From the sequence record NC_019929.1: a DNA stretch of 64,000 bases; one strand, written 5' to 3'. Position 1 is the first letter of the stretch; every line of letters begins with the position of its first letter. Below are positions 22,020 to 61,298 of the stretch, piece after piece. Below the pieces are notes generated by a model that made no database searches, was not told the origin of the DNA, and was given only the letters and a program-made list of their open reading frames with translations. The translations under genes were made by a program, and so were the position numbers.

Positions 22020-22028
22020 AAATTATCT

Positions 22029-22862: not shown

Positions 22863-22868
22863 GAAACT

Positions 22869-22894: not shown

Positions 22895-22901
22895 GTCTTT
22901 T

Positions 22902-41567: not shown

Positions 41568-41635
41568 CCCCTTTTAATATGCTGGCAGGGGGTCATAGAC
41601 GTGACCTCAACAATCCCTTTAAACGAGTTAACGCG

Positions 41636-42433: not shown

Positions 42434-42443
42434 GGGGGTCTGA

Positions 42444-43277: not shown

Positions 43278-43286
43278 GGATAGACG

Positions 43287-44141: not shown

Positions 44142-44161
44142 TCCTGCTAAAGGAAGTTAGA

Positions 44162-45058
44162 ATGAAACCTTTAAACAAAACGTCCGACCTCCTGGTTCTC
44201 GATTTCATCAATGAGAAGAACTCAGGTGCGAATCTCGAACTGACCAAAGTTATTCTGGGTACGCCTGTTGAAAACACCGGTGCGGACAAAGATGACCGTA
44301 ACACCCAGATGGATGTCAAGGCGCGTAAGAACTCCGGTTACATCGGCGATCAGGGCGTGACCTATAACCGTCTGGAAGGTGAGAAGCTGTTCCTGAACGT
44401 CACGGCTTACCTGGACGTGAAAGAACCGAAAACCACCACTGACCTGCTGAGCAAACTGAACGAGCAGTACGGTCTGAAAATCACCGAAGACGACATCGAC
44501 CCAACGGCTATCCCGGACGGCACTAACCCGCCAGTAACCAACCCGGAAGATCCAGACCCGGCCCCGGTTGATCACCTGGTGACCTTCAAAACCGATTGCT
44601 ACGCCTACCTCGGCGCTATCCCGGTGAAAATCGGTGCTAAGCCACAGGTCGGTGAGCGTCTGAGCCTGGTCATCACCCAAACTCAGCTGGATGGCCTGGT
44701 ATACCCAGACACCCCGATTGAGAACAAAGGTCAAGGCTACATCTACTCCTACGGTGTGGACTGTTCTGCCATTGCTGCGTTCCTGGATGTGCAGGCAACC
44801 GGCGTGATGGCGAACGACACGGCGTTTGCCGTCGAGCTGAACAAAGTGGTTCCAGAGCTGTGGGTTGCGGAAGATGCCTCTAAGGATTACAACCTGAAAG
44901 GCGCAAACGTAACCTACGTTGGCCTGACTGCGGACGACGGTACGGGCAAACCTGTTGAAGGCGCGAACACCGCTTACAACAAAGTGATGCTGCTGGAGCT
45001 GGACGACACCAAGTGCTCTAACTTCACCGGTACCATGTTCCTGCACTTCAACGCCTAA
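44162..45058 (+). CDS. Virion structural paralogue, family I, copy 4 (probably abundant)
   Basis: VLDFINEKN, RNTQM, YNRLEG, TQTQLDGLVYP, GTMFLHFNA; extreme codon bias. Confidence 0.8.
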   Translation: MKPLNKTSDLLVLDFINEKNSGANLELTKVILGTPVENTGADKDDRNTQMDVKARKNSGYIGDQGVTYNRLEGEKLFLNVTAYLDVKEPKTTTDLLSKLNEQYGLKITEDDIDPTAIPDGTNPPVTNPEDPDPAPVDHLVTFKTDCYAYLGAIPVKIGAKPQVGERLSLVITQTQLDGLVYPDTPIENKGQGYIYSYGVDCSAIAAFLDVQATGVMANDTAFAVELNKVVPELWVAEDASKDYNLKGANVTYVGLTADDGTGKPVEGANTAYNKVMLLELDDTKCSNFTGTMFLHFNA

Positions 45059-45065
45059 TGGCACG

Positions 45066-45108
45066 CTAGGGGGAGGCTATCCTCCTCCTAGCACTGCTTT
45101 CTTTTTTC
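45066..45108 (+). terminator. Intrinsic terminator
   Basis: CTAGGGGGAGG-CTAT-CCTCCTCCTAG then T-rich run. Confidence 0.7.
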
Positions 45109-45126
45109 TGTGCCGAGGAGGCTGCT

Positions 45127-45963
45127 ATGGCGATTTATAGTCAGTCTCAGCGACAGTATCTCTTTGATGCAATCAACGCGGAGAACCCTGGCGCGATTAT
45201 GCCCATGGGGTTGAACAACGCGATTATCGGGAAACCGAAAGTGATTCCAACAACAGAGACTGGAGCCAATACCGAGATTGTCATTCGTGGCCGTCAAGGG
45301 CGGGGCTACGCAGGCGGACAAACTTTCCGCTACAAGCGTTTGTCGCTGAACGACTTATTTAAGAACCTGGTTGCGACGGTGACTTCACCGCAGGCGTATG
45401 GCTGGCTGAACAACGATGCGAAGAAACTCGCGTTTGTCCAAAACGTCAACGCGCGCTATGGTCTTAATCTGGAAGCCATTGATATTCCAGATGTGTACGT
45501 ATACCTCAACAACAAGAACACGGTCAACGTGTTAGCAACCTGTGTCCAGTACACCGGTGGGATTACCTTTAACTCGGTTAGAGGGAAGAACTCGCTGGAA
45601 GAAGCAATTCTGGATGATGTGTTGAAGGTACTGAATCACCCTATTGACGTCGACGACCAAAAGCTCTGCGGAACGATGCTGGGTTATAGCGTGGACTTTA
45701 CAGACGAGCCGCAAATTATGCAGGCGTTTGTGAATGGGCGTATGGACGTGGGGGCGAACTTTACTTCGGGGGCCAGTGATAACCTGGTGACACTGATGGT
45801 CAGTCGTGGGTTACCGTCGTTTGATTTTACCGGTGCCACGATTAAGCGTGTGAAGACCACCGCGGAACCACGGGCCAACACAATGTACGATAACGTGCTG
45901 GTTATCACGAACGTTAACGATCCTCACGTCGGTGGCGATTGGCTGCTGCACTACAACGATTAG
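45127..45963 (+). CDS. Virion structural paralogue, family I, copy 5
   Basis: LFDAINAEN, YKRLSL, GGDWLLHYND. Confidence 0.75.
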   Translation: MAIYSQSQRQYLFDAINAENPGAIMPMGLNNAIIGKPKVIPTTETGANTEIVIRGRQGRGYAGGQTFRYKRLSLNDLFKNLVATVTSPQAYGWLNNDAKKLAFVQNVNARYGLNLEAIDIPDVYVYLNNKNTVNVLATCVQYTGGITFNSVRGKNSLEEAILDDVLKVLNHPIDVDDQKLCGTMLGYSVDFTDEPQIMQAFVNGRMDVGANFTSGASDNLVTLMVSRGLPSFDFTGATIKRVKTTAEPRANTMYDNVLVITNVNDPHVGGDWLLHYND

Positions 45964-45974
45964 GAATAAAACGA

Positions 45975-46862
45975 ATGGCAATCTATCAACCTTCGAAGGA
46001 CGTCATTCTGGCCGCCATCAATGCACAGAACTCCATCGCGGTTAAAGCGACAGACATTGTGTACAGTGCGCCGAAAGACATTCGTGGTACTGATAAAGGT
46101 AACACGACCAAAAAGAACACCCAGGTTAAAGTCACCGCCGACGGCGTTGTGGGGTCAACCTGGTCGGGCAAAAAGAACGTGTTTTACGACCGTCTCCAGA
46201 TTCAGGACTTGGTGGTGCTGATTGGTGACACGCTCTACATCGGACCGTCAAACAACCATCTTCAGGAAGCTATCCCTGCCCTGAACCTGCGTTATGGTTT
46301 TGTGTTTGAAGCGGGTGATTTGCAAGAAGCAGAAATCCTGTGGAACGAAGACAAAACGGCGGGCACGGTAAAAGTGAAAGCAGTTGAGACTTCACTGGGC
46401 TGGATTGGTGAGTACAACTTTAAAGTGGCGAAAGGTGACGAATCCCTGCCGTCGAAAGTGTCAACCAACACCCTGTCCGGTCTGAAATACCCGAATGGTC
46501 AGATGGGTTCCGAGACGGTCGCAGCCACCATTGCGCAGGTTTACTCGTACCCGTTCAACTTCACCGTGTACCACGACCTGTTCAAATCATTCACACCGGG
46601 TGTGTTGACGGGCGATGCCCTGACCAACTTCGTCAACGCGATGAAGGTCATCACTGGCGGATCGTGGGTTACCACCAACAACGCCACCTGGGGTCTGTCT
46701 GGTGCAGAAGTTACGTTCGTGGGCGACAACGACGCAGTTACCATGCCAACCAACAGCAAGTACAGCTTCGTGCTGGCGGTGAAACTGCCTGCGTCGCTGA
46801 CGGCGATGGTCGGTACGATGTACCTGCAATTCAACAAACCAGAAGACCCGAACGAGGTGTAA
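45975..46862 (+). CDS. Virion structural paralogue, family I, copy 6
   Basis: ILAAINAQN, YDRLQI, STNTLSGLKYP, GTMYLQFN. Confidence 0.75.
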   Translation: MAIYQPSKDVILAAINAQNSIAVKATDIVYSAPKDIRGTDKGNTTKKNTQVKVTADGVVGSTWSGKKNVFYDRLQIQDLVVLIGDTLYIGPSNNHLQEAIPALNLRYGFVFEAGDLQEAEILWNEDKTAGTVKVKAVETSLGWIGEYNFKVAKGDESLPSKVSTNTLSGLKYPNGQMGSETVAATIAQVYSYPFNFTVYHDLFKSFTPGVLTGDALTNFVNAMKVITGGSWVTTNNATWGLSGAEVTFVGDNDAVTMPTNSKYSFVLAVKLPASLTAMVGTMYLQFNKPEDPNEV

Positions 46863-46865
46863 TGT

Positions 46866-47711
46866 ATGGGACTCAACTACAGTAAGCCTTCTGACTTGCT
46901 GGTCTTCGATCTGTTAAACCGGGACAACCCCGGTTTACCGATTCCGGTGGATGCGAATAACGTCATCATCGAGAAGATTACGCAAGTGACGCCAGGCCCG
47001 GCCAATAACAACCGCAACACCCAGGCACGGTTACGTGGGGTACAGGGAATGGGGTTCCGCGATTCCCTGACCTTGTACTACGACCGTATCAGTTTGGCAC
47101 GGCTTATCCCTTGGTGGAGCTACGGTACAACTACACGTACCGCGTGCGGTATTACCAACTTCACAGCAGCGAACCTGCACGAACTCCTGCCATCCATTCT
47201 GGATACGTACGGTATTAACCTGCAACCCAAAGATGTGACCAATCAAAACTTTAGTGGTGTAGGCCAACCGAACTATAACTTCACCTACGCTTGTAATGCG
47301 TTGGCGACTTCGCCTGCGTATTTCAGCGGTTTCACCGGTTACCTGATGCGTGGTCTGCCGGTGCTGGATACGTCGATTACGATTGACACCTTGAACGTCA
47401 TGAAGCACCCGATTGGCATTGACACCAATCAGATGTGTGTGGACTTGATGACCTGGGGTATCGATTTCACGGCGTACAAGAACCTGCTGACGGTCACGTC
47501 GGGCGGTCTGCCAAACTGGGCAGGTCTACGTAACCTGTTGGACAGCCTGGGTGTGCCGAACTACGCTGCACCGATGAGTTCCAACACGGTGCAAGACGTC
47601 GCCACCACGGGGAACCAGTGGGCGAACAAAGACTACGACCGCGTGGTGATTCAAACCGGTATCGATGAGACCGGAGCGAAGGGTGTAGCCTACTATCACT
47701 ACAACAACTAA
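46866..47711 (+). CDS. Virion structural paralogue, family I, copy 7
   Basis: VFDLLNRDN, RNTQARL.G..G.GF, YYDRISL, GVAYYHYNN. Confidence 0.75.
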   Translation: MGLNYSKPSDLLVFDLLNRDNPGLPIPVDANNVIIEKITQVTPGPANNNRNTQARLRGVQGMGFRDSLTLYYDRISLARLIPWWSYGTTTRTACGITNFTAANLHELLPSILDTYGINLQPKDVTNQNFSGVGQPNYNFTYACNALATSPAYFSGFTGYLMRGLPVLDTSITIDTLNVMKHPIGIDTNQMCVDLMTWGIDFTAYKNLLTVTSGGLPNWAGLRNLLDSLGVPNYAAPMSSNTVQDVATTGNQWANKDYDRVVIQTGIDETGAKGVAYYHYNN

Positions 47712-47714: not shown

Positions 47715-47741
47715 AAGGGCCTGCGGGCCCTTTCTTTTTTG
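47715..47741 (+). terminator. Intrinsic terminator
   Basis: AAGGGCC-TGCG-GGCCCTT plus T-tract. Confidence 0.8.
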
Positions 47742-47765
47742 TCGTAGGTGGGCTTAGGAGTCACT

Positions 47766-49184
47766 ATGCAATTCTATTCCAGTGCTGCGTTACAACTGAT
47801 ATACGACCAGGTGAACCGAGACAACCCGGATTTACCGGTAAAGCTTACCCAGGACGTCGCGGCACTCAAGAGTGGGCCGACGGCTAACTCTGCCAATGGG
47901 CGCAATACCCGTGCGGTATTTGTTGCCTATCCCGGTAAAGGGTACCGTGGTGAAATCACACTCTATTACGACCGTGTTAACTTAGGACAAATCTTTACCA
48001 CGACACTCCGCCCGCTTATCAGCCTGCCTACGACAGTGAAGACGTTAGCAGATGCGTTGCCGTATTTGAACGACTTGCTCGGGCTCAGTCTGACCGTTGA
48101 GGATTTACAATCCCCCACGATGGCCCTGGCTCCGGATACCACCGTTAAGAATACCCAGGCGGCGATTGTCTCCACATCACCAGCGTTTCAGGGTGGGGTG
48201 AATTTCTCGTACCAGGCAGAAGGGCTTGGCTATTACCCGAATTCAGGCCCAGGGCCAAAGACGCTCCGCGCGGGCAATACCTTGATGGGGTATTTCGGCA
48301 AGGTGGACGCGTCTGAACTGTATACGCACGCAGAGCTGTATAACCTGACACTGAAAGGTACACCGGCGACGCTGTATGCAGGAACCGAAGGGTGGTACAA
48401 GTTCTTTTATCAAGGCGGGATTATTTATCTACCGGTAACGCCACTCGCGTATAACGTTAACTGGTCTATCATCTATAACGCGGGGATAGCGTACGGTATC
48501 GAGGGTGTCGGCGCATACCCAACCGTCACACCGGTCAACCAGTCGAAGATTCTGACGAAGTCACTGCCTGAGGGCAAGTTCTATCTGCGTCCACGTTTAC
48601 CGACAGCCAGTGTGAAGGACCCGATGACCGCAACCACCGGCACACTGCCAATTGCAGAGTACGTCGGCAGTATCCTCGAGTTAATGTTGAAAGTGCGAGA
48701 CGGGACGTGGGAATCTAACACCGAAGGTCGGTGGAATGACTGGGCAGTGTTCCTGAACAGCATCGCCGGGACAACCGGTAGTTTTAAACTGGTGGTACCG
48801 CTGTCAAAGAACGGTACCAACGTCGTCAAAACCAATACCGCTACCGCTTGGTACTGGTGGCCGGTGTTAGAGTTGGTGGATACCAATACCACGTTATTGA
48901 AACTGGAAGACCTGACCGGAAAACTGGAAACCTCCTTTACCCCGATTGTGGCCAGCCGTGAACAGAAGTTCGCGTTAGCGCCTGCGGTGTTCAGTGGGCC
49001 GAAGACCACGTTGTTCCAGCCGGTTGTCACGACGCCAGAGAATAGCTTGGCTATTGCTCCACCGATTCCGCTGTTACCGAAGACTGTTGATTTCCGTCCG
49101 GTCGTTGCAACGGGCAGTCAGGTAGATGCACCAACCAAAATCAATCTTTCCTCCCTCAATGGCGAATTGAGCGGGTTTAATTAG
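47766..49184 (+). CDS. Triplet module 1, gene A: anchor domain + domain Y + Pro-rich spacer + NGELxGF tail
   Basis: 472 aa; YYDRVNL, SGPGPK..GN..GYFG, WWPVLEL, NLSSLNGELSGFN. Confidence 0.8.
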   Translation: MQFYSSAALQLIYDQVNRDNPDLPVKLTQDVAALKSGPTANSANGRNTRAVFVAYPGKGYRGEITLYYDRVNLGQIFTTTLRPLISLPTTVKTLADALPYLNDLLGLSLTVEDLQSPTMALAPDTTVKNTQAAIVSTSPAFQGGVNFSYQAEGLGYYPNSGPGPKTLRAGNTLMGYFGKVDASELYTHAELYNLTLKGTPATLYAGTEGWYKFFYQGGIIYLPVTPLAYNVNWSIIYNAGIAYGIEGVGAYPTVTPVNQSKILTKSLPEGKFYLRPRLPTASVKDPMTATTGTLPIAEYVGSILELMLKVRDGTWESNTEGRWNDWAVFLNSIAGTTGSFKLVVPLSKNGTNVVKTNTATAWYWWPVLELVDTNTTLLKLEDLTGKLETSFTPIVASREQKFALAPAVFSGPKTTLFQPVVTTPENSLAIAPPIPLLPKTVDFRPVVATGSQVDAPTKINLSSLNGELSGFN

Positions 49185-49196
49185 AGGTAAGACGCC

Positions 49197-50186
49197 ATGG
49201 CATTTATATTGCGCTGGACGAACCCAAACGCAATGAGCACGGTGATTAACATTTACCGTGACACCAAAGACATCCTCACCAGTGCCTTGCCTGCACCGAT
49301 TGCCACGTTAAGTAATGGCGAAACCGAATGGCGCGACACTACCGCACTGGGCGGGAAAACCTACTACTACCTGATGACCGTTACCGCTAACGGTAAAACC
49401 GTCGCTGGCCCTTCCACCCCGTATACCGTCGCGGTGAAACGCGGTATTGGTCCGAGTACCTTTATCCACGGGGACGACAAGCTGGGCTTTATGGGGGTGG
49501 TGCCGTACGAAGAACGTTTCGACGTTAACCAACTTCCTGCAACCTTCCTGTCCATGTTCCCAAACGCGTTCACCGATCGTCCTGTGTTGTTGAAGTTCAG
49601 CTACTACGGGAAGATTATTTACGTCCCGGAATTCTCTCCCTCTATTGGGTTTGCCAGTTGGGCAGCACTTTACACCAACGGGTTAATCTACGGACGTGAT
49701 GACAATGGCCCGGATGGGGGTTGGGGAACACTGACACCTACGAAGCAGGATGCCAAAGTTGTCCATAAAGGTGACATTTACCGGATGCGCGTACCACGGG
49801 GTATCGTGGGGCAGAACACACCAGAGGTATTAGCCTTTAATAACGATTTCCAGTTGAAAGACCATGACGCGGTTGACCTTGGTAACAACGAGTTCAACGA
49901 CTTGATGTACGCCATGGTACTGGACTTCCCAGTAAAGCAGCGTGCCATTAATGCCCACGTATACAGCTCAACGTATCTCGGTGCGGGTGGTGTAGTTAGC
50001 GCTAACCCGAATTTGAACGGTGGTACGGTGTGTATGGAGCACGACAGTGCAAGTGAGCGAGTGTTACATCGCGGACATTATATTACCGCAACGAACCAAT
50101 CGCAGCTCAGTCTAATGCAGCGTATCAACTACGTGACTCCGCAGCAGGCTGGCCGTTATCTTCCCATCTTTGAACTGGTAGAATAG
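49197..50186 (+). CDS. Triplet module 1, gene B: FN3-like domain + domain Y
   Basis: LRWTNPN..IYR..YYYL (FN3-like W/Y pattern), GIGP..HGD..GFMG, YLPIFEL. Confidence 0.8.
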   Translation: MAFILRWTNPNAMSTVINIYRDTKDILTSALPAPIATLSNGETEWRDTTALGGKTYYYLMTVTANGKTVAGPSTPYTVAVKRGIGPSTFIHGDDKLGFMGVVPYEERFDVNQLPATFLSMFPNAFTDRPVLLKFSYYGKIIYVPEFSPSIGFASWAALYTNGLIYGRDDNGPDGGWGTLTPTKQDAKVVHKGDIYRMRVPRGIVGQNTPEVLAFNNDFQLKDHDAVDLGNNEFNDLMYAMVLDFPVKQRAINAHVYSSTYLGAGGVVSANPNLNGGTVCMEHDSASERVLHRGHYITATNQSQLSLMQRINYVTPQQAGRYLPIFELVE

Positions 50187-50194
50187 GAGCAGTT

Positions 50195-51124
50195 ATGACC
50201 ATTCGTTTAAGCTGGGTTTCACAGGCCAGCAAAAACCTGACTGCTATCGAAATCTATCGTAAAGTTGGGTATGCAGCCACACTCGACGTGAATGCTCCTG
50301 GGACGCCGTATAAGACACTTTCTCCAACAGCCACAGAGTTTATCGAGAATGTGTCTGACGTGACGGAGAAGACCATCTACAGCTACTGGGTAGCAGGTGT
50401 GAAAGATACTGAACGTTTGTTCGGCGCACGGATCGTGCAAGGGTTCTTTTTGGATACTGGGCCAGGCCCACAAACCATTCTCCGTGGAGATTGGTACTGT
50501 GGTTACTTTGGACCGGTTTCTGCTGCGGACTTCTTTACGACCGCTGAAATAAAATCCCTGCTGCCTACAACGCAGGCAGCGATGTTCAGCAACGAACCAG
50601 GAACATGGCACAAGTTTATCTACCTGGGTAGGATTGTGTTCATACCGGCTTCGCAACATACCCAAGCCATTTTTTCTAACGCATACACCCGTGGAATGGC
50701 TTACGGTACCGATGACAACGGTACTATCGTCCCCACAGGCCAAACGGCAACGAAACAAGATGCCCGTATCGCGAAGAATGGCCGCACGTACCGTATTCGT
50801 TTACCTCGAGCTGATGCATACGACACTAAACTCGATGTTACCAACGGTGAGTGGTTCTCGACCATGGGTCGAATGTTTAACAACGCCAACGATTACTCGA
50901 AGGTGGTGGATGCGAATGGGGTAGGGCGTGGAAAATTTGGTGGGTTGGCATTGCTGGGCAATACCGCCAACCAAACCGATCCTGGTGCACAATGTTTAAT
51001 GCCGATGTATAGCGCCGGGACCGTGTTCTTTGCTTACGGTTACCGACCAGATTCGTGGACCACCACCTCATCGCTGAGTACGAACATCGGTATGAGTTTT
51101 GTGTTTGAATTAATCCTCCCGTAA
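50195..51124 (+). CDS. Triplet module 1, gene C: FN3-like domain + domain Y
   Basis: LSWV..IEIYR..YSYWV, TGPGP..RGDW..GYFG, FVFELILP. Confidence 0.8.
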   Translation: MTIRLSWVSQASKNLTAIEIYRKVGYAATLDVNAPGTPYKTLSPTATEFIENVSDVTEKTIYSYWVAGVKDTERLFGARIVQGFFLDTGPGPQTILRGDWYCGYFGPVSAADFFTTAEIKSLLPTTQAAMFSNEPGTWHKFIYLGRIVFIPASQHTQAIFSNAYTRGMAYGTDDNGTIVPTGQTATKQDARIAKNGRTYRIRLPRADAYDTKLDVTNGEWFSTMGRMFNNANDYSKVVDANGVGRGKFGGLALLGNTANQTDPGAQCLMPMYSAGTVFFAYGYRPDSWTTTSSLSTNIGMSFVFELILP

Positions 51125-51136
51125 TGGAGAACCACC

Positions 51137-52537
51137 ATGGGGTTTTACAGTGATACGTCGTTGGCACTGTTGTGTCAACAGATTCTCCGTGATAACCCCG
51201 GATTACCTTACCCGCTGACGAAAGACAATGTGCTTATCTTAAGCGGGCCTTTAACTTCCGGTTTAGGGACGAGTGGGCGTAACAGCCGCATTACCTTAAA
51301 CGGGAAGTTAGGGTCGGGTTTTTCTGGGCGTAAGGAGTTCTTTTACGATCGCCTGAAAATGGAATCCATTTATACCAGCCTGCTATCGACGCTGGTACTG
51401 ACGATGCCAAATGGCGTAGCGACCAATGCAGACTTGCTCCCCACTATCAACGATGCGTTGGGATTAGGGTTAGCGTCAACAGACTTAGCTGCCCCCAGTA
51501 CCACGTTAGGGTTAGGCCGTACACCAACCACTGCAACGCTGGCATTGGCCACTAACTGTCCGTGTTTTACTGGCACCCTCACCGTGCAGTGGCAACGCGG
51601 CAGTACCGCGATTTATCCCGATTCGGGCCCTGGCAGTAAAGTGATGTTGATGGGTGACTTGAACGAAGGTTACTTCGGGATGGTGACACAACAGGAACTG
51701 GCAAAAGGGGTGGATGTCTATGCTGCATTTGCTGAGGGGAAATCCTTAGGCACAGCAGGTGGGGTCGATACCGCAGATATGTTCTGGCTGAAGTTTGCGT
51801 TAGACGGCAAGATTTGTTATTTCCCGTCACGCAACATCGGTGCAAACATCACCTGGAATACCCTGGCTAATAACGGGGCAGCCCGCGGAGATGCCAAATA
51901 CCCGATAACCTTCGAAGCAGGTGATGGCAGTACCGTCTTTGCACAACTTCGCCTACCCAACATCAGCACCACCGAAGTTGTTAATCCGAGTCGTGGCGAT
52001 CCTACGTCCGACCCAGTGCGGTTGTTCAACAAAGTCCACAAACAGACATACGGCACCGGTGTCTGGGACGAACTCACCACCATTAACATGGCTGAGGTGT
52101 TCTGGTGGTTAAACCGATATGCGGCATCCAGTGGTAACTCGGCTGTTATCAGTCAGTTTAACATCGCCTCTGTTAACGCCAATGCCATTGTCAATACACA
52201 CAACTGGCGACCCATGCTGGTGTTGGTGGATGGGGAATTGGTACTGGTTCCTCTTCGGAATGTGCAGGGTGAACGCTATTCGGTGTTATCCGCGCCGGGA
52301 CTAACCTACGATCGTACTCCTGACCCGAAACAACTTACGCGTGTGCGGGATGTGAATGGTACGCTGGATAACCCGGTTAGGAAGCCTTGGTTGAACCCAG
52401 TGGGCAGTGCGCCATTAACGGCAGTGCATAACCTCGCCATTGTTCGCGGGTTAAAGCCTATCCATCCGCAAGTAAGTGTGACCATCAACACCAAGATTAA
52501 TCTGGCCACGGCCAACGGTGAATTAACCGGTTTCTAA
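51137..52537 (+). CDS. Triplet module 2, gene A
   Basis: 466 aa; FYDRLKM, SGPGSK..GD..GYFG, WRPMLVL, NLATANGELTGF. Confidence 0.8.
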   Translation: MGFYSDTSLALLCQQILRDNPGLPYPLTKDNVLILSGPLTSGLGTSGRNSRITLNGKLGSGFSGRKEFFYDRLKMESIYTSLLSTLVLTMPNGVATNADLLPTINDALGLGLASTDLAAPSTTLGLGRTPTTATLALATNCPCFTGTLTVQWQRGSTAIYPDSGPGSKVMLMGDLNEGYFGMVTQQELAKGVDVYAAFAEGKSLGTAGGVDTADMFWLKFALDGKICYFPSRNIGANITWNTLANNGAARGDAKYPITFEAGDGSTVFAQLRLPNISTTEVVNPSRGDPTSDPVRLFNKVHKQTYGTGVWDELTTINMAEVFWWLNRYAASSGNSAVISQFNIASVNANAIVNTHNWRPMLVLVDGELVLVPLRNVQGERYSVLSAPGLTYDRTPDPKQLTRVRDVNGTLDNPVRKPWLNPVGSAPLTAVHNLAIVRGLKPIHPQVSVTINTKINLATANGELTGF

Positions 52538-52549
52538 AAGGGCAAGTAT

Positions 52550-53587
52550 ATGTCTTTAAAACTCTCGTGGAACAACCCCAACGTTGTTCCTACCCGTGTC
52601 CGGATTTATCGGAAAGACACGGATTTCGATTCCAGCACGTTGCCCGCACCGTTAGTGGAACTGACGAACGGTGAAACCACCTGGATTGACCCGACCGCCG
52701 TTGATGGTAACAGTTACTATTACGTTCTCGGGTCAAAGACCGACACGGATGAGGTCTTCACTGCCAGCCAAAAGATTCTGGTGGCAGATAACCGGGGCGT
52801 CGGGTCGAGCACCATTCTGCACGGTGATGCATCGCTGGGTTACATGGACTCGATTCTGTCTGTGGATTTTGTTAACTCGTCAACCATTCTGGCAGCTGCC
52901 CTTAATGCGTCCGGTTTACCGGTTGCGCTGGTACAGCCGACATGGCACAAGTTCATTCGCAACAACAAAATCATCTATGTTCCTGACCAGCAATTCGGGA
53001 CGGCCTCTTTCCCGAATCTGTACCGTGCCGGGTTTGTCTACGGTACGGACTCTGTGGGGCCAGAAGGTTACCCAACAGCTGGTCTGGCAGCACCCGTAAA
53101 CCAGTTACGGATTATCGAGTTCAAAGGCCAGAAGTACAAAATCCGCCTGATGCGGGGCTGGAGTGACGGGGTGATTACTGACGTTAACAACTGGGCCAGC
53201 ACCGGTCAAAGCAACATGGATTTGGTGCCGGAGGCGCAGAACAACGAGTACAGTGACCTTATCTACTCACTGGCAAAATTCGTACCGTTAAAACAACGTA
53301 CGCCGAACTGGCTTAATCTGTCGGTTGACCCGTGGCTGGGCGCACCTTTGTCATCTTACGACAGTGCCACCATCAACAGCTGGCGTGCCACGTTCCGTGT
53401 TCTGTGTCAAGAACGGCGGGCAAACGGGAACATTTTTACGCGCAGTATGCGTGAGTGTACGCTGAACCAAAACCAGGGTAGCCCGAACTCGAAAGCGAAC
53501 TTGACGTACGTGTTTTTGGGCGATGTTAACCAGGCCACTATTTGGATTCCGGTACTGGAACTCGTTGAACAAACCGCCACACTGTAA
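52550..53587 (+). CDS. Triplet module 2, gene B
   Basis: LSWNNPN, RGVG..HGD, WHKF, WIPVLEL. Confidence 0.8.
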   Translation: MSLKLSWNNPNVVPTRVRIYRKDTDFDSSTLPAPLVELTNGETTWIDPTAVDGNSYYYVLGSKTDTDEVFTASQKILVADNRGVGSSTILHGDASLGYMDSILSVDFVNSSTILAAALNASGLPVALVQPTWHKFIRNNKIIYVPDQQFGTASFPNLYRAGFVYGTDSVGPEGYPTAGLAAPVNQLRIIEFKGQKYKIRLMRGWSDGVITDVNNWASTGQSNMDLVPEAQNNEYSDLIYSLAKFVPLKQRTPNWLNLSVDPWLGAPLSSYDSATINSWRATFRVLCQERRANGNIFTRSMRECTLNQNQGSPNSKANLTYVFLGDVNQATIWIPVLELVEQTATL

Positions 53588-53598
53588 GGGAGGCTGGC

Positions 53599-54483
53599 AT
53601 GGGTATTAAACTCAAGTGGGACGATCAGTCGGCCCAGAATCTGGACGGGATTGAAATCTACCGTTCAGCCACAAAGATTGACAGCAACAATCCCGGTGCC
53701 CCACTGGCCACGATTGCCGGTAGCGCAACAGCGTACGAAGACAACAGTGTTCTGAACAAGTCACTGTATTACTATCGTATCCTGGCGAAGAAAGGCACGG
53801 ACAAAGCCTGGTCAGAAAATATCCTGGCCGGGTATTTCGCAGAAACGGGGCCGGGTAACCCAACGCCATTACGTGGCGATTGGAATGCTGGGCTGATGGA
53901 CACTGTGCTGCCGCAGGATCTTATCACCAATGCGGCACTACGGGCGAAGGTGCCATCGTTGGCAGCACTCAGTGGCGCTGCGGAACCTGGTGCTTGGTAT
54001 AAGTTCTGTTATAAAGGGACCGTGTTCTTCTGCCCCAGCGCATCCATCGTTACCGCGAGTTGGTCACAGTTATATTCGGCTGGTTTGGTCTACGGGACAG
54101 ACGATGTGGGTGTGTCACCTTCCGGGCCAACAGGGACTGTCAAACAACGGACAGTGGTGAACATCAACGGGCTGAACTATATTCTGCGGTTACCACGCAT
54201 GTCGACCTTGCCGTTAAACCAGTACGTGGTTAATCAGGCTGACACGCTAGGCAGTGAGTGGCGCGACACCGTTGCGCGTTTAGTTGCAGACGGGGTAGAC
54301 ACTTCACCGGGAAGCCGGACTCGCCTGTTTGATTTGGGTTCCTTCGCAAATGCGTTGGGGCCACACCTCAATACCAACGTTAACGTGGCAGGGGTGACCT
54401 CTACAAAACCTGAGACATTGGTTGCTTACAACAGCGGTGCTTCGGTTGCGCAAACTTTGGTGTTAGAACTCATCATGCCTTAA
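53599..54483 (+). CDS. Triplet module 2, gene C
   Basis: LKWDDQ, TGPG..RGDW, WYKF, LVLELIMP. Confidence 0.8.
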   Translation: MGIKLKWDDQSAQNLDGIEIYRSATKIDSNNPGAPLATIAGSATAYEDNSVLNKSLYYYRILAKKGTDKAWSENILAGYFAETGPGNPTPLRGDWNAGLMDTVLPQDLITNAALRAKVPSLAALSGAAEPGAWYKFCYKGTVFFCPSASIVTASWSQLYSAGLVYGTDDVGVSPSGPTGTVKQRTVVNINGLNYILRLPRMSTLPLNQYVVNQADTLGSEWRDTVARLVADGVDTSPGSRTRLFDLGSFANALGPHLNTNVNVAGVTSTKPETLVAYNSGASVAQTLVLELIMP

Positions 54484-54493
54484 TGGAGGGGTT

Positions 54494-56017
54494 ATGGGGC
54501 TTTATAACAAGACGTCCCTCGAACTGTTGTGCCAACAAATCGAACGGGACAATCCCGCAACCGCGGGTCAACTTGACGCGGCGTCGATACTGGTGCTCAG
54601 CGGGCCCTTAACCACTGGTCTTGGAACAAGCGGGCGCAATGCCCGCATTATCCTGAACGGTCGTTTAGGAAATGGTTTTATCGGAAAGAAGGAATTCTTT
54701 TACGACCGTTTAAACATTGGACAAATGTTCAAAGGCATCACAGTGGTGTTTCAGGCAGAGGGGTCGTCTAAGACGTACGCCGATTTACTGCCCGCGCTGA
54801 ATGCGCAATATGGATTGGGGTTAGCGGCGGCAGACATTGCCAACGCCACCACCAAACTCCCTTATGGCTACGCGCCAACACAGCTCACGTTAACCATCGC
54901 TGCAACGTCCCTGGCGTATACGGGTACGTTGTCAGTGACCTGGTCACGGAAACCGGTGGGTGTCTTCCCGGAATCTGGCCCAGGTTCGAAGGTCATGCTT
55001 ATCGGGGACATGAATGAGGGCTATTTCGGGGTTGTGACCGAAGCCGAGTTGTTCAGCCCAGTGGAAGTCCTCAGTCAACTGAACGAAGGGCGTACTGAGC
55101 CTTACGGGACGTTACAGGCCATGCCAACCAGTCGGTTTTGGTATAAGTTCGCACGCGATGGGAAAATCTTCTATCTCGCGAACTACAACCAAATCAGTAT
55201 TCGCTGGCAGGAGTTGTACCGCTTGGGGGGTATCTACGAAACGGATACGCCAGACAATAAACAGTTCCCGCCCGATGGGGTGCTGTCTCGTCAAAAGAGC
55301 GTGTTGAAGAAGAAGGAAAATGGGCGCGATTGGTATCTCTCTCCAACCGCACCGAAACTCGCGGGGAGTGACCCGTGGGAGTACGCCGGAGTAAACCAAA
55401 CCCCTGACCCAGGTGGGGACGTTGCGAGACTGTTTGCAAAGGTTGTACCATCGGGTGGTTTCGCCACCGGGGAATGGGATGGTCAAATCATCAATGCTGA
55501 CGGGTTCTGGATGTCCACGACATCACAAACCTCGCCTGCAAATGCATACGGCAGTAGCATGATCGGTGCCAACCAGGGTCAGTACAATAAAACCAACTTT
55601 GTTGGGGGCTGGCGACCGTTCCTGGAACTGGTTGATGTAACCAAAATCGCATTAGGCTTGAACCCGTTCAGTGGGGTACCGGAAGGGGTGTTAAGAAAAC
55701 CTCTGGTCTCCATCAGTCCAGAAGTGACGGATGTGTTGTTAACCCTGAGTGATGTGAAGTGGGAACAAAACGGGGCATTGCGCATTCCGTTAGTGTCGCA
55801 GACATTGCAACCGTTACAAATGACCACGTATTTTGGCTGGACGCGGTTACTTCGTCCGGCTCTCGTGACGGTAAAGCATGAGCCGATACGTAACGTCAAC
55901 CAGGTAGGGTGGACTCGCCCTCTCCGGCGACCTGTCGCGGCACTGACCGTGGACTACAAGGAATCAACAGCCTTTAACTTAGCCAACGCCAACGGTGAGC
56001 TAAACGGCTTTAAATAA
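54494..56017 (+). CDS. Triplet module 3, gene A
   Basis: 507 aa; FYDRLNI, SGPGSK..GD..GYFG, GWRPFLEL, NLANANGELNGFK. Confidence 0.8.
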   Translation: MGLYNKTSLELLCQQIERDNPATAGQLDAASILVLSGPLTTGLGTSGRNARIILNGRLGNGFIGKKEFFYDRLNIGQMFKGITVVFQAEGSSKTYADLLPALNAQYGLGLAAADIANATTKLPYGYAPTQLTLTIAATSLAYTGTLSVTWSRKPVGVFPESGPGSKVMLIGDMNEGYFGVVTEAELFSPVEVLSQLNEGRTEPYGTLQAMPTSRFWYKFARDGKIFYLANYNQISIRWQELYRLGGIYETDTPDNKQFPPDGVLSRQKSVLKKKENGRDWYLSPTAPKLAGSDPWEYAGVNQTPDPGGDVARLFAKVVPSGGFATGEWDGQIINADGFWMSTTSQTSPANAYGSSMIGANQGQYNKTNFVGGWRPFLELVDVTKIALGLNPFSGVPEGVLRKPLVSISPEVTDVLLTLSDVKWEQNGALRIPLVSQTLQPLQMTTYFGWTRLLRPALVTVKHEPIRNVNQVGWTRPLRRPVAALTVDYKESTAFNLANANGELNGFK

Positions 56018-56028
56018 CAGGTGGAAAC

Positions 56029-57012
56029 ATGGCACTTAAACTTCTCTGGAAGAATCCCAATACCGTTGCAACCACGATTGACATTTACCGCGGTGACACG
56101 TCGAACGTTAGCTTAACCACGCCACTGAAAACCGTGGATGGTGCGGAGACGTCGTGGATTGACACCACGGCATTGTTTGGGAAAACGTACTATTACGTCT
56201 GGGCAGTAAACTCGGCAGTTGACCGGGTCGTGTCTCGTCCGCAGAAAATCGAAGTCTCTGACCGTCGTGGGCCAGGGTCGAACTTGTTGCGTCACGGTGA
56301 TGAGAACTACGGTTACTACGGTGCGGTGTCAGCGGCGGACTTCGTTAACAGCACCACGCTGTATAACGCAGCGAAAAACACCTCCGGTTTACCGACTACC
56401 GTTATCTACCCGACGTGGCACAAATTTGCCCGTAAAGGGAAAGTCGTCTTTGTGCCCAACCAGTGGTTCGGGGATGTTACCTGGCAGAGTCTGTATGACG
56501 CGGGTCTGGTCTACGGGACAGATGATGTTGGCGGAGCCAATCCGGCAGGCACCGTTAACCAGTTGACCACTTTTGATTTCAACGGTGAAACGTTCCTGAT
56601 TCGTTTGATGAAAGGAATGCCAGAGGGTCTCGTGTGGGACGGGTCAAACTTTAACCCGAATACCTTCGCCCCGATGAAAGACGTCTACGCCGAATACGAG
56701 GACTTCCTCTACCCGTTGTGTAAAGACGCGCCGTTACGCCAAAGAATGGTCTCGGTTGATACACTCGACGGCAGGGCCTGGATACCAGGGGCAGCCTACA
56801 ACAACCGTGTCAACTATGGGGTGATTTGTCAGGAAGCCCTGGCCAACGTGTTGGTACGTGGTACGCCGAACTACAACAACGACCCGTCAACACGCAGTTC
56901 CATGGAATCCACGATTGCCCGCAGTCGTACCGCCGGGACACCGTGGGTACCGGTTGTCGAATACGTGGGTCGTGTAGGTGAGACCTTTACCCTGCCGAAG
57001 ACGGCCAAGTAA
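56029..57012 (+). CDS. Triplet module 3, gene B
   Basis: LLWKNPN, RGPG..HGD, WHKF, WVPVVEY. Confidence 0.8.
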   Translation: MALKLLWKNPNTVATTIDIYRGDTSNVSLTTPLKTVDGAETSWIDTTALFGKTYYYVWAVNSAVDRVVSRPQKIEVSDRRGPGSNLLRHGDENYGYYGAVSAADFVNSTTLYNAAKNTSGLPTTVIYPTWHKFARKGKVVFVPNQWFGDVTWQSLYDAGLVYGTDDVGGANPAGTVNQLTTFDFNGETFLIRLMKGMPEGLVWDGSNFNPNTFAPMKDVYAEYEDFLYPLCKDAPLRQRMVSVDTLDGRAWIPGAAYNNRVNYGVICQEALANVLVRGTPNYNNDPSTRSSMESTIARSRTAGTPWVPVVEYVGRVGETFTLPKTAK

Positions 57013-57022
57013 GGAGTAGAAC

Positions 57023-57919
57023 GTGGGTATTAAAATTAACTGGGACGACCAGACTGACCAGGCACTGGATGCAGTAGAAGTGTATCGGAGCACCTCACCT
57101 ATTGATGAGAATGCACCTGGAACCCCTATTGCGACTTTACCGGGCACGGCACGAGAGTACGAAGACACCGGCGTGAAGAACGGTAACACGTACTACTACC
57201 GTGTGGCAGTGGTGAAAGGCGCTAATCGCTCTTTCGGTACTCAACAGACCGCAGGGTACTACTCTAACCTCGGGCCCGGTCCGAAGAAGATTCTGCGGGG
57301 CGATTGGATAGCTGGGTATTTCGGTGAGATGCTGAATGCAGACTGGGTGTTGCCGTTGGATGTGGCGAACAAAATTACCGCAGCCCTGAAATCCACCGTT
57401 GGGATTAACTACATCACCTCGTCTGACCGTTGGCACAAGTTTATCTATAAAGGTAAAGTGTTGTTCGTGCCATCTACCCGACTGATGTACTCGACGTATG
57501 CAAACGCGTACAACGCCGGGTTCTTGTTCGGTGAAGACGGCGTTGGCCAACTGCCGACGGGGCCTGCGGGGAACGTTAATCAGAAAACGGTTATCGAGAT
57601 TGGTGGGTATCAGTTCCTGGTACGCCCTATCCGCATGTCGGACAAACCAACTTCGCAGTACCTGACCGCACAAGCGGACTTTGTGGAAAGCGAATGGAAG
57701 AAGACGTTTGCCCGTTTGCGTATCGATGCGAACGCACAAACCGACCCAACCATCTTTGCCCGGTTCAGCGACTACACCACCATCGACTGGTGCGGCGGCC
57801 CACACCAGGCAAGCGCAACGACGTGTGCAACTGCGGTTAACGGCAACCCGGAGAATCTCGGTACCACGGCGAACACCAGTAACATCAACTGGTGTATTGC
57901 ATTGGAATTGATTCCGTAA
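57023..57919 (+). CDS. Triplet module 3, gene C
   Basis: INWDDQ, GPGP..RGDW..GYFG, WCIALELIP; GTG start after AAGGAG. Confidence 0.8.
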   Translation: MGIKINWDDQTDQALDAVEVYRSTSPIDENAPGTPIATLPGTAREYEDTGVKNGNTYYYRVAVVKGANRSFGTQQTAGYYSNLGPGPKKILRGDWIAGYFGEMLNADWVLPLDVANKITAALKSTVGINYITSSDRWHKFIYKGKVLFVPSTRLMYSTYANAYNAGFLFGEDGVGQLPTGPAGNVNQKTVIEIGGYQFLVRPIRMSDKPTSQYLTAQADFVESEWKKTFARLRIDANAQTDPTIFARFSDYTTIDWCGGPHQASATTCATAVNGNPENLGTTANTSNINWCIALELIP

Positions 57920-57923: not shown

Positions 57924-57961
57924 TACCCTCTCGCCTTCGGGTGGGAGGGTATTTCTTTTTT
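57924..57961 (+). terminator. Intrinsic terminator
   Basis: TACCCTCTCGCC-TTCG-GGTGGGAGGGTA plus T-tract. Confidence 0.9.
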
Positions 57962-60184: not shown

Positions 60185-60709
60185 ATGGCAAAAACAGCAC
60201 GAGCGCAATTTATTGCGATGTTCAACGCGGATAACACTGGTCTGGCGCAAGCACTGGTCGAAGCAGATGTTACCTTTGGCGCAGTGGCCGAATATGACCC
60301 TGCCGATGAGGCCGATACCCGCAACTCCAAAGTGACGCTGACTGCCGTTGCAGAAAGCACGCACTTTACCGGGGAAAAGGAATTCCACTTCACCCGTCTG
60401 GCTGCAAACATCGTTGGTGCGAAAGCAGTTACCGATGACCAGGCCGACTGGGACACCGATGCCGAAGTCCTGGCATTCCTGAATGCTGACGTTATCTCCG
60501 CTGGTAAAGCGGATGATGCGTTTGCACTCAGCGAGCTGGACATTGTTCGTACCGATGGTGCGGATGATGCGAAAGTGATTACCGTCACTATCAAAGCCGG
60601 TCACCTGAAGTTCCTGCCAGGCGATGTGGCAGTCTACACCATTACGCAAGAGATCACTAAAACTGACCTCTCTACCACAAATGGTGAGCTCAACGGTTTC
60701 ACAGCTTAA
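60185..60709 (+). CDS. Short virion paralogue: anchor domain + NGELNGF tail (probably abundant)
   Basis: FIAMFNADN, RNSKV, FHFTRL, DLSTTNGELNGF; strong codon bias. Confidence 0.8.
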   Translation: MAKTARAQFIAMFNADNTGLAQALVEADVTFGAVAEYDPADEADTRNSKVTLTAVAESTHFTGEKEFHFTRLAANIVGAKAVTDDQADWDTDAEVLAFLNADVISAGKADDAFALSELDIVRTDGADDAKVITVTIKAGHLKFLPGDVAVYTITQEITKTDLSTTNGELNGFTA

Positions 60710-60791: not shown

Positions 60792-61298
60792 ATGGCTAAG
60801 TCGTTGCAAGAACTGTTTGTCGATATGATCAACGAAGTCAATCCAGATTTAGGGTTAACGCTCAGTGACGTCACATTCGGTGCGCCTTCCGAATACACCC
60901 CTGCGGATTCAGGGGACACCCGTAATACCGTGTTGACCTTAGTGGCAAAAGATGACAGCCCGAATTTCAAGGGCAGTAAAGATTACCACTTCTTCCGCTT
61001 CAATTTCACTAACCCTGGCGGTGTCACTACCCCAACATTAACCACCGGGGATTTGATTGGGAACTGGCAGGACGATGCAAAGGTCTTGATGGTCATGAAC
61101 ATGATGCTGCCGAATTACAAACTGACAGCAGAAGAGATTGGCATCGAACGCGTGACCGTGGATGCCACCACGTTAGATGTACGCATCACCATCGACCCGA
61201 ATCATTTAAAGTGGCACGGGACATTTGTGACACGCGTAATCGACGAAGGGAAAACCAACCTGCAATGGTTGAATCCCGAGTTGAGCGGGTTCAAATAA
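60792..61298 (+). CDS. Short virion paralogue: anchor domain + NPELSGF tail
   Basis: FVDMINEVN, DVTFGAP, RNTV, YHFFRF, NLQWLNPELSGFK. Confidence 0.8.
   Translation: MAKSLQELFVDMINEVNPDLGLTLSDVTFGAPSEYTPADSGDTRNTVLTLVAKDDSPNFKGSKDYHFFRFNFTNPGGVTTPTLTTGDLIGNWQDDAKVLMVMNMMLPNYKLTAEEIGIERVTVDATTLDVRITIDPNHLKWHGTFVTRVIDEGKTNLQWLNPELSGFK

What the first reader, a model, noticed from the sequence alone, without database searches (positions are those of the whole stretch)
47766..57919. An A-B-C three-gene module repeated three times: candidate heterotrimeric receptor-binding system
Seen: nine genes fall into a strict period of three. A (466-507 aa) has anchor + domain Y + spacer + NGELxGF. B (327-345 aa) starts W-x-NPN with an FN3-like domain + Y and has HGD. 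C (294-309 aa) starts W-[DV] with an FN3-like domain + Y, has RGDW and ends EL-I-x-P. All nine share domain Y: GPG..GD..G[YF].G, W.KF...G....P, Y..G..YG.D..G, RL, [SN]E[WYF], terminal P.LEL. Each protein resembles its positional counterpart in the other modules more than its neighbours, so the triplet was the duplication unit. Inference: three distinct hetero-oligomeric adhesin heads, each tethered by A, giving nine binding sites and possible combinatorial mixing. I know of no description of this architecture.
Basis: partly seen in the sequence, partly recalled or inferred. Interest (0 to 1): 0.75.

Follow-up and report, generated by a model that had tools for sequence, protein, structure and literature searches.

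The report
Repeated three-gene head-protein modules, jumbo phage
The nine genes are a real A-B-C triplet repeated three times in Erwinia jumbo phage phiEaH2, but their counterparts in a related phage sit on the phage head, not the tail, so they are more likely a fast-evolving head-borne appendage than the main receptor-binding system.

Summary
The window is bases 1-64000 of Erwinia phage phiEaH2, a phiKZ-like jumbo phage. Genes gp066-gp074 form three A-B-C triplets. A tree of the shared Y domain gives A, B and C clades (98/88/94% bootstrap) and never groups by module. Relatives carry one, two or three complete triplets, and whole triplets have been exchanged between phages.

- The array is longer. 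Seven upstream and two downstream paralogs share A's N-terminal domain.
- It is orthologous to the published SPN3US "paralog family B".
- Mass spectrometry of tailless SPN3US particles places all nine A/B/C counterparts on the head, at low copy number and uncleaved.

Domain anatomy:
- A is an anchor domain (fold like phiKZ gp127), then Y, an 80-106-residue disordered linker and a conserved C-terminal peptide.
- B and C are FN3 plus Y, with no anchor.

Y has no relative among solved structures. In other phages it occurs as tandem Y-Y-Y chains and is fused to Kelch, lectin-like, discoidin and Ig-like domains. The modules are the divergence hotspot between near-identical phages.

Best reading: A tethers B and C through Y-Y contacts into a low-copy, variable appendage on the head or neck. 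This part is inferred, not shown.

The parts
41579..47711 (+). Seven short paralogs gp059-gp065 (277-298 aa, full-length DUF7941 type). They share the N-terminal anchor domain with A1-A3 and are themselves ordered a-b-c, a-b-c, b.
   Evidence: (gp062)
47715..47732 (+). Terminator-like GC hairpin followed by a T run, between gp065 and A1. It is the upstream bound of the nine-gene block.
47766..49184 (+). A1 (gp066, 472 aa): anchor, Y, 80-aa linker, C-terminal peptide.
49197..50186 (+). B1 (gp067, 329 aa): FN3-like domain plus Y.
50195..51124 (+). C1 (gp068, 309 aa): FN3-like domain plus Y.
51137..52537 (+). A2 (gp069, 466 aa): anchor, Y, 81-aa linker, C-terminal peptide.
52550..53587 (+). B2 (gp070, 345 aa): FN3 (residues 1-76, nt 52550-52777) plus Y (nt 52778-53584). 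AlphaFold2 model has pLDDT 92.
53599..54483 (+). C2 (gp071, 294 aa): FN3-like domain plus Y.
54494..56017 (+). A3 (gp072, 507 aa): anchor at nt 54494-54958, Y at 54959-55636, disordered linker at 55637-55954, conserved C-terminal peptide at 55955-56014.
56029..57012 (+). B3 (gp073, 327 aa): FN3-like domain plus Y.
57023..57919 (+). C3 (gp074, 298 aa, GTG start): FN3-like domain plus Y.
57924..57951 (+). Terminator-like 12-bp hairpin followed by a T run, directly after C3. It is the downstream bound of the nine-gene block.
60185..60709 (+). gp079 (174 aa): a 'minimal A', with the anchor domain followed directly by the same C-terminal NGELxGF-type peptide. It is the counterpart of the abundant SPN3US head protein gp160.
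60792..61298 (+). gp080 (168 aa): a second minimal anchor-plus-peptide paralog.
49300..54600 (.). Divergence island against the same-species phage Stratton. Nucleotide identity is 47-90% here, against 93-100% over the 9.6 kb upstream and mostly 90-99% downstream (one 300-nt window in C3 at 86%).

Best explanation
The nine genes are the distal part of an array of 18 head-associated paralog genes in the phiKZ-like jumbo phage phiEaH2. The array is orthologous to SPN3US paralog family B.

Each A-B-C module encodes three proteins that carry the Y domain, which among predicted viral structures matched only phiKZ-like jumbo phages. Only A also has a virion-attachment module. That module is an N-terminal anchor domain of the DUF7941 / phiKZ gp127 fold, plus a conserved C-terminal peptide at the end of an 80-106-residue disordered linker. 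B and C are FN3 plus Y and have no anchor.

The most likely mechanism has four steps:
1. The nine genes are expressed as one unit.
2. Within a module, A, B and C join through their Y domains.
3. A fixes the assembly, at low copy number, to the outside of the head or the neck.
4. The C-terminal half of Y, which changes fastest, is an exposed surface that binds something variable in the host envelope or surroundings.

This would work as an accessory head-borne adhesin in the manner of T4 Hoc, not as the primary tail receptor-binding apparatus.

Shown: the triplet structure, its duplication and exchange as a unit, the domain anatomy, and head association of the orthologues. Inferred: the A-B-C complex, the exterior location and the binding role.

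Confidence by sub-claim: triplet as unit 0.95; head-associated 0.8; A-B-C complex 0.55; exterior and adhesive 0.5.
For: Identity and orthology:
- The window is 100% identical to phiEaH2.
- gp059-065 are 58-80% identical to SPN3US gp138-144, and module 1 is 45-55% identical to gp145-147, in the same order.

Triplet as the unit:
- Type clades have 98/88/94% bootstrap support with congruent subtrees.
- Triplet counts are 1 in CR5, 2 in Kwan and EarlPhillipIV, and 3 in phiEaH2, Stratton, Asesino, SPN3US and JN03.
- JN03 module 3 groups with the Erwinia-phage module 3 in all three trees.
- PhiEaH1, a different genus, has two triplets, each one A-type Y protein plus two FN3-Y proteins.

One transcription unit:
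- Spacers inside the block are 8-12 nt.
- Two of the three strongest hairpin-T sites of the region bracket the block.

Head location (PMC10052503 supplement):
- SPN3US gp145-153 have head/WT ratios of 1.06-1.67 in tail-tube-mutant heads.
- They give 44-188 spectral matches, against 283 for the 12-copy portal.
- None is cleaved by the prohead protease.
- phiKZ gp83 is annotated as a head protein.

Anatomy:
- Pfam DUF7941 positions 1-156 match only the A proteins, at 78-102 bits.
- In the A3 model, residues 1-390 are folded and 391-493 have pLDDT below 50.
- The anchor matches phiKZ gp127, chain 9xqd_0, with E 9e-4 and TM 0.58.
- The B2 model has pLDDT 92, and its N-terminal domain matches FN3 domains with TM 0.53-0.67.
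- B and C give no anchor hit.
- The same C-terminal peptide ends gp079, gp080 and SPN3US gp160, and 37 of 53 A-family relatives.

Y-Y association:
- Natural single chains carry 2, 3, 4 and 5 complete Y domains. One is a 694-aa protein that is exactly Y-Y-Y.

Exposed or binding role:
- Fusion partners of Y in relatives are Kelch, ConA-like lectin, discoidin, Ig-like and SWM repeats.
- phiEaH2 and Stratton proteins are 99-100% identical in flanking genes, but 51% in B2 and 54% in C2.
- Within B, the FN3 domain is the most conserved part and the C-terminal half of Y the least.
- SPN3US capsids carry unassigned outer density (PMC7552025).
Against: - No proteomic or structural data exist for phiEaH2 itself. 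Head location is carried over from SPN3US and phiKZ.
- Modules 2 and 3 are only 27-41% identical to any SPN3US module.
- The tailless-particle criterion cannot tell outside from inside the shell, or shell from neck.
- The SPN3US authors suspected that abundant family members are ejection proteins.
- The only solved relative of the anchor domain, phiKZ gp127, was placed on the baseplate periphery. One SPN3US family member, gp237, is a tail protein.
- No multimer prediction could be run, so the A-B-C complex is untested.
- Tandem Y chains come with 2 to 5 or more copies, so a trimer is not singled out. Their Y domains do not sort cleanly into A, B and C types.
- No ligand is known.
Confidence: 0.5

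Rival explanations
1. Internal head proteins: the A/B/C proteins are packaged inside the capsid and delivered into the cell with the DNA. Their fast evolution would then reflect an arms race with host defences.
For: - They are head-associated in SPN3US.
- The SPN3US authors marked abundant family members (gp141, gp143, gp160) 'head ejection?'.
- phiKZ gp83 is a head protein but is not among the ten icosahedrally ordered capsid proteins.
- SPN3US heads hold much disordered internal protein.
Against: - None of the family is cleaved by the prohead protease or has its cleavage motif, whereas the major ejection proteins gp53, gp54 and gp47 are cleaved.
- B and C carry FN3 domains.
- Relatives fuse Y to Kelch, lectin-like, discoidin and Ig-like domains, which are typical of exposed binding proteins.
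- The anchor fold is seen on an external virion surface in phiKZ.
Confidence: 0.18
2. Purely structural decoration: the paralogs occupy different quasi-equivalent sites of the T=27 shell or the portal vertex and only stabilise the head. There is no binding function, and the divergence is drift in weakly constrained proteins.
For: - The T=27 shell has five hexamer classes.
- SPN3US shows an unassigned protein at each of 260 hexamer centres.
- Family members differ widely in abundance.
- phiKZ uses many minor proteins to stabilise its capsid.
Against: - A/B/C counts are near that of the 12-copy portal, far from 260 copies.
- Module number varies from 1 to 3 among phages with the same capsid type.
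- Whole modules are exchanged, and the sharpest divergence sits in one half of Y.
- The fusion partners are binding domains.
Confidence: 0.15
3. One reading: three heterotrimeric receptor-binding heads mounted on the tail or baseplate, which decide host recognition.
For: - The anchor domain resembles phiKZ gp127, docked at the baseplate outer periphery.
- SPN3US gp237, of the same family, is a tail protein.
- In PhiEaH1 the two triplets follow a tail fibre gene.
- In phiEaH2 an EPS depolymerase lies upstream and a tail assembly chaperone homologue downstream.
- The region is a divergence hotspot.
Against: - All nine SPN3US counterparts stay with tailless heads at full level. Known baseplate and fibre proteins (gp84, gp168-170) drop to 0.06 or less in the same samples.
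- phiKZ gp83 is annotated as a head protein and is absent from the 40-protein phiKZ atlas, which covers the neck, tail and baseplate.
- No fold match to any tail fibre or tailspike was found.
Confidence: 0.1
4. Intracellular docking: head-surface adaptors that hold capsids to a structure of the nucleus-forming infection cycle, such as the phage nucleus shell, filaments or virion bouquets.
For: - Among predicted viral structures, the Y fold matched significantly only proteins of phiKZ-like jumbo phages.
- The proteins are head-associated.
- Kelch partners can mediate protein-protein contacts.
Against: - A conserved intracellular partner does not explain about 50% identity in B2 and C2 between same-species phages.
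- It also does not explain copy numbers of 1 to 3.
- Lectin-like and discoidin partners point to carbohydrate ligands.
Confidence: 0.05

Closest known systems
SPN3US paralog family B (gp83, gp138-154, gp160/161, gp237; Thomas et al. 2016, Ali et al. 2017, Scheuch et al. 2023)
   Same: Direct orthologues in the same order: seven short genes, then three A-B-C sets. They are virion proteins, assigned to the head by mass spectrometry of tailless particles, not cleaved, and of unknown function.
   Different: The papers treat the family as one PSI-BLAST group. The period-3 structure, the domain anatomy, the module exchange and the fusion partners are not described there, as far as I could read. phiEaH2 lacks gp154/155 counterparts after C3 and has two gp160-type genes instead of one.
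T4 Hoc and other Ig-like or FN3-bearing head decoration proteins
   Same: A head protein that carries an Ig-superfamily-type domain. It is not cleaved. An outer hexamer-centre density in SPN3US has been likened to Hoc. The proposed role is accessory surface adhesion.
   Different: No sequence or fold match to Hoc came back. Here there are three different chains per unit, only one with an anchor. Copy number is low rather than one per hexamer. The main domain (Y) has no solved relative.
phiKZ gp127 (PDB 9XQD chain 0) and phiKZ gp83
   Same: gp127 shares the anchor fold (Foldseek E 9e-4; hhalign E 4e-4 at only 34.5% probability, so weak support by itself). gp83 begins with a Y domain (hhalign probability 92%). 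The SPN3US supplement lists these as the phiKZ matches of the family.
   Different: gp127 was docked on the baseplate periphery, not the head. gp83 is a single gene, with Y followed by a Kelch propeller and no FN3 partners. phiKZ has no triplets.
Branched multi-receptor-binding-protein systems of large phages (for example CBA120-type tailspike sets, PhiKp24 fibres). I recall these from general knowledge; they were not tested here.
   Same: Several paralogous binding proteins are encoded in a row. One chain acts as the adaptor for the others. Cassettes are exchanged between relatives.
   Different: Those sit on the baseplate and are homotrimeric beta-helix or fibre proteins. No such fold or location is found here.

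Membership tests
SPN3US paralog family B | Sequence homology to SPN3US gp138-154 | tested here: met
   Best hits are 58-80% identical for gp059-065, 45-55% for module 1 and 27-41% for modules 2 and 3, always to the same type.
SPN3US paralog family B | Same contiguous gene array and order | tested here: met
   Seven short genes then A-B-C three times in both phages.
SPN3US paralog family B | Virion protein present in tailless heads | not testable with these tools
   Shown for SPN3US only. No phiEaH2 proteome was found.
Pfam DUF7941 | Match above the gathering score over the whole 276-position profile | tested here: inconclusive
   A1, A2 and A3 score 78-102 bits against a cut-off of 27, but cover only profile positions 1-156. 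B and C give no match.
Fibronectin type III domain (N-terminus of B and C) | Pfam fn3 match above the gathering score | tested here: not met
   The only hit is C3, at 13.5 bits against a cut-off of 25.
Fibronectin type III domain (N-terminus of B and C) | FN3 fold | tested here: met
   B2 model residues 1-76 match many FN3 domains with probability 1.00 and TM 0.53-0.67. A profile of the B/C alignment A3 hits the FN3 domain of a pectate lyase with E 1e-3.
Tail fibre / tailspike receptor-binding proteins | Located on the tail or baseplate | tested here: not met
   The orthologues remain in tailless heads, while tail proteins drop to 0.06 or less.
Tail fibre / tailspike receptor-binding proteins | Fold or family match to known fibres or spikes | tested here: not met
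   There are no such hits in PDB sequence, profile or fold searches. The only PHROG 'tail' hit is to the FN3 stretch of a J-type fibre.
T4 Hoc-type head decoration | Homology to Hoc | tested here: not met
   No Hoc chain appears among the PDB hits.
T4 Hoc-type head decoration | Bound outside at hexamer centres | not testable with these tools
   SPN3US has such density, but it is unassigned.
phiKZ-type internal head / ejection proteins | Propeptide removed by the prohead protease | tested here: not met
   Published SPN3US data: every family B member is listed as unlikely to be cleaved.
phiKZ gp127-like baseplate periphery protein | Shared fold of the N-terminal domain | tested here: met
   Foldseek gives E 9.4e-4, probability 1.00 and TM 0.58 to 9xqd_0, which is PHIKZ127. 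hhalign gives E 4e-4.
phiKZ gp127-like baseplate periphery protein | Baseplate location | tested here: not met
   The SPN3US orthologues are in heads.

The most novel reading that the evidence does not exclude
Nucleus-forming jumbo phages carry a second, head-borne recognition layer. Each A-B-C module builds a three-chain Y-domain appendage that is tethered to the capsid by A alone. Phages vary it by changing module number (1-3), by swapping whole modules between lineages, and by rapid change of one face of Y. This would give function to the largest paralog family known in a phage genome.
Probability: 0.3. Interest if true: 0.75.

Novelty: new variant of a known kind. Interest (0 to 1): 0.55.

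Why it matters
The family these genes belong to has been called possibly the largest paralog family in any single phage genome. It makes up 21 of the 55 SPN3US head proteins. It has had no proposed function beyond a question mark.

This analysis shows four things:
- The family is built from three-gene units.
- Only one chain per unit can attach to the virion.
- The shared domain is a fold with no solved relative, and elsewhere it is joined to lectin-like and Kelch domains.
- The units are the fastest-changing part of otherwise near-identical phages.

Together these turn an unexplained gene block into a specific hypothesis that structural work can test: a heteromeric, exchangeable appendage on the head. 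It would also bear on how phages used against fire blight differ from each other.

Tried and rejected
Searches and analyses that led nowhere:
- Single-sequence and profile searches of PDB sequences with A3, B2 and their family alignments gave nothing for the anchor or Y domains. Only weak FN3 hits appeared.
- The fold search gave no significant match for Y.
- The first tree script timed out. The second failed on a distance formula and on a regular-expression domain cut. The result used is.
- Sorting the Y domains of tandem-fusion proteins into A, B or C types was inconclusive, because the scores differ little. They cannot be called single-chain A-B-C.
- The contig that carries the Y-Y-Y protein showed no recognisable neighbours.
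- Isoelectric point and composition did not separate the inside and outside hypotheses.
- The sigma-70 promoter scan was below chance, as expected for this phage group. The terminator count as a whole was at chance, and only the strongest sites are used.
- Four papers searched held nothing on these genes, and a literature search on phiKZ gp83 found nothing relevant.

Reading rejected: that RGD in C is an integrin-type motif. The G-D pair is in eight of the nine proteins (A1 has G-N), and R/W or H are type-specific neighbours.

Full report
**Identity of the window.** The region 47748-57919 is 100% identical to Erwinia phage phiEaH2 (JX316028 / NC_019929) at the same coordinates. The window is therefore the first 64 kb of that 243-kb genome, genus Erskinevirus, a phiKZ-like jumbo myovirus. 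The nine genes are gp066-gp074, annotated only as virion structural proteins. An EPS depolymerase gene (gp058) lies upstream. An endolysin (gp075) and a tail assembly chaperone homologue (gp077) lie downstream.

**The observation.** It is correct.
- The nine ORFs are at the stated places, with lengths 472/329/309, 466/345/294 and 507/327/298 aa.
- Proteins of the same position align end to end, with E values from 4e-36 to 5e-83.
- Proteins of different position share only about 75-215 residues.
The Y-domain tree splits into A, B and C clades with 98%, 88% and 94% bootstrap support. No module forms a group in any of 500 replicates.

**The array is larger than described, and periodic throughout.**
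- Seven genes upstream (41579-47711, 277-298 aa) share the first ~150 residues with A. These seven also fall into three types, with 96/98/97% bootstrap support, ordered a-b-c, a-b-c, b. In CR5 the order is a-b-c, a-b-c, b-c-b.
- Two genes downstream, gp079 and gp080, consist of the anchor domain followed directly by the same C-terminal peptide that ends the A proteins.

**The triplet is a unit in evolution.**
- SPN3US, JN03, Stratton and Asesino have three A-B-C sets. Kwan and EarlPhillipIV have two. CR5 has one. The sets are always complete and in that order.
- The A, B and C subtrees have the same shape. One branch holds module 1 of all phages, SPN3US modules 2 and 3, and JN03 module 2. The other holds the CR5 module, the Erwinia-phage modules 2 and 3, and JN03 module 3.
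- JN03 is otherwise nearly identical to SPN3US in modules 1 and 2. It therefore carries a third module of the Erwinia-phage kind, which implies exchange of a whole triplet.
- PhiEaH1, of another genus, has two triplets. Each is one A-type Y protein (without the anchor, with a C-terminal extension) followed by two FN3-Y proteins. The three-gene unit is therefore older than the fusion of the anchor to A.

**Domain anatomy.**
- Pfam finds DUF7941 in A only, and only its first half.
- The AlphaFold2 model of A3 (43-sequence alignment, mean pLDDT 74.7) is confident for residues 1-390. It is disordered from 391 to 493, and a short conserved C-terminal peptide follows.
- The linkers are 80-106 residues, rich in L, V, P and T.
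- The only significant solved-structure match of A3 is chain 0 of 9XQD (E 9.4e-4, TM 0.58), which is phiKZ gp127. A weak profile match (hhalign E 4e-4, 34.5% probability) places it on the anchor domain.
- The B2 model is very confident (pLDDT 92.2). Its first 76 residues match FN3 domains, and the rest matches nothing solved.
- Among predicted viral structures, all 37 significant matches (E ≤ 0.001) that carry an organism name, 27 of them, are proteins of phiKZ-like jumbo phages, and every annotated one is called a virion structural protein or uncharacterised, apart from a Kelch-like protein of phage EL.
- B and C have no anchor.

**What is known about the family.**
- In triplicate mass spectrometry of wild-type virions and of tailless particles from a tail-tube amber mutant, gp138-154 are all classed as head. 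The normalised head/WT ratios of gp145-153 are 1.06-1.67.
- In the same samples the homologue of phiKZ baseplate protein gp139 (SPN3US gp84) has ratio 0.056, and the fibre candidates gp168-170 are nearly absent (PMC10052503 supplement).
- Spectral counts of the nine (44-188) bracket that expected for the 12-copy portal (283 at 72 kDa). Scaling to the portal or to the capsid protein gives roughly 4 to 75 copies each. This is my rough estimate, not the authors'.
- Within modules, counts per kDa agree within about threefold.
- None of the family is cleaved by the prohead protease, unlike the major ejection proteins gp47, gp53 and gp54.
- The SPN3US supplement lists phiKZ ORF083 and ORF127 as the phiKZ matches.
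- phiKZ gp83 is annotated as a structural head protein. It starts with a Y domain and ends in a Kelch propeller.
- gp83 is not among the ten ordered minor capsid proteins of the 3.5-Å phiKZ capsid, nor in the 40-protein atlas.
- gp127, by contrast, was docked at the end of a gp139 band in the baseplate outer periphery. One SPN3US family member, gp237, is a tail protein.
- The anchor fold is thus used at more than one virion site.

**Evidence on how the proteins work.**
- A profile of the nine Y domains finds 2035 sequence clusters (E ≤ 0.001) in public data.
- Among them are single chains with two, three, four and five complete Y domains set 8-12 residues apart. One is a 694-residue protein that is exactly three Y domains. 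Such fusions argue that Y domains sit side by side in the assembled state. They do not fix the number at three, and their Y domains do not sort into A, B and C types.
- Other relatives join Y to Kelch propellers, ConA-like lectin domains, a discoidin domain, nine Big_6 repeats, Big_13 and SWM repeats. All of these are typical of exposed binding proteins.

**The modules are the variable part of the genome.**
- Between phiEaH2 and Stratton (same species), 300-nt windows are 93-100% identical over the 9.6 kb upstream and mostly 90-99% downstream of the island, with one C3 window at 86%. Identity falls to 67-90% from the start of B1 and to 47-60% from the 3' end of A2 through B2 and most of C2. 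It recovers in A3.
- Protein identities in order are 97, 83, 81, 75, 51, 54, 96, 99 and 98%.
- Within B proteins, FN3 is the most conserved part and the C-terminal half of Y the least. B3 against Asesino gives 75, 58 and 36%. The A linkers also change fast.

**Expression.** Spacers between the nine genes are 8-12 nt. Two of the three strongest hairpin-plus-T sites of the scanned 18 kb bracket the block, at 47715-47732 just before A1 and 57924-57951 just after C3; the third follows gp062. One transcription unit is inferred.

**Best explanation and rivals.**
- I conclude that each module most likely forms a Y-domain hetero-oligomer. Only A can attach it to the virion. It sits at low copy on the head or neck, most likely outside, and presents a variable face of Y.
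It moves the structure from the tail to the head, and it makes it an accessory rather than the primary receptor-binding device.
- The complex, the outside location and any binding are inferences.
- The main rival is packaging inside the head, which the lack of cleavage, the FN3 domains and the fusion partners make less likely.
- Pure structural decoration fits poorly with low copy number, variable module number and cassette exchange.
- The tail reading conflicts with the proteomics.
- An intracellular docking role does not explain the divergence between same-species phages.

**Limits.**
- There are no direct data for phiEaH2.
- Copy numbers from spectral counts are rough.
- The phiKZ gp127 placement was made by docking a predicted model into a map of about 4.4 Å.
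- No repaired, consensus or ancestral sequence was built.

Noticed in passing
window 41579-47711: The seven short paralogs upstream are also period-3. There are three types (96-98% bootstrap) in the order a-b-c, a-b-c, b. CR5 has nine, in the order a-b-c, a-b-c, b-c-b. In SPN3US their abundances differ more than tenfold, and the gp062 counterpart gp141 is very abundant.
   Followed up: partly
window 60185-60709 and 60792-61298: gp079 and gp080 are 'minimal A' proteins, with the anchor domain followed directly by the NGELxGF-type C-terminal peptide. In the regions examined, one such gene was seen in SPN3US (gp160, an abundant head protein) and one in Kwan, two here and four in SPAsTU.
   Followed up: partly
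window 39707-41524: The EPS depolymerase gene gp058 sits directly upstream of the array in Erwinia phages (phiEaH2, Stratton, Asesino, Kwan) but not in SPN3US or CR5. Its N-terminal ~100 residues match tail-fibre N-termini in PHROGs. Where it sits on the virion is unknown.
   Followed up: no
L006 (JN03) about 15990-16490: Salmonella phage JN03 has an unannotated gap of about 500 nt exactly between C2 and its Erwinia-type third module. This may be a trace of the exchange.
   Followed up: no
P0109-P0123 (metagenomic proteins): Long chains carry many Y domains. One is a 2172-aa protein with eight or nine Y matches, and another has a Kelch domain followed by four Y domains. I did not check whether these are true genes or merged gene calls beyond their regular 8-12-residue spacing.
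   Followed up: partly
L014 (PhiEaH1) 3686-14902: In PhiEaH1 an anchor-only gene, a 1292-aa tail fibre gene and then two A'-B-C triplets lie in a row near the tail sheath gene. This is a different neighbourhood from phiEaH2.
   Followed up: partly
L002 (SPN3US) 19836-23347; L005 (CR5) 12496-15989: SPN3US gp154/gp155 and CR5 gp143/gp144 form a pair of head proteins. gp154 has the anchor domain, and SPN3US gp154, gp155 and CR5 gp143 share a similar C-terminal tail. The pair lies after the modules in SPN3US and before the single module in CR5, and is absent at this place in phiEaH2.
   Followed up: no
window 62552-64000, - strand: A pair of radical SAM genes lies downstream of the array in every relative examined (phiEaH2, Stratton, Asesino, CR5, JN03, Kwan, SPAsTU, EarlPhillipIV).
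   Followed up: no
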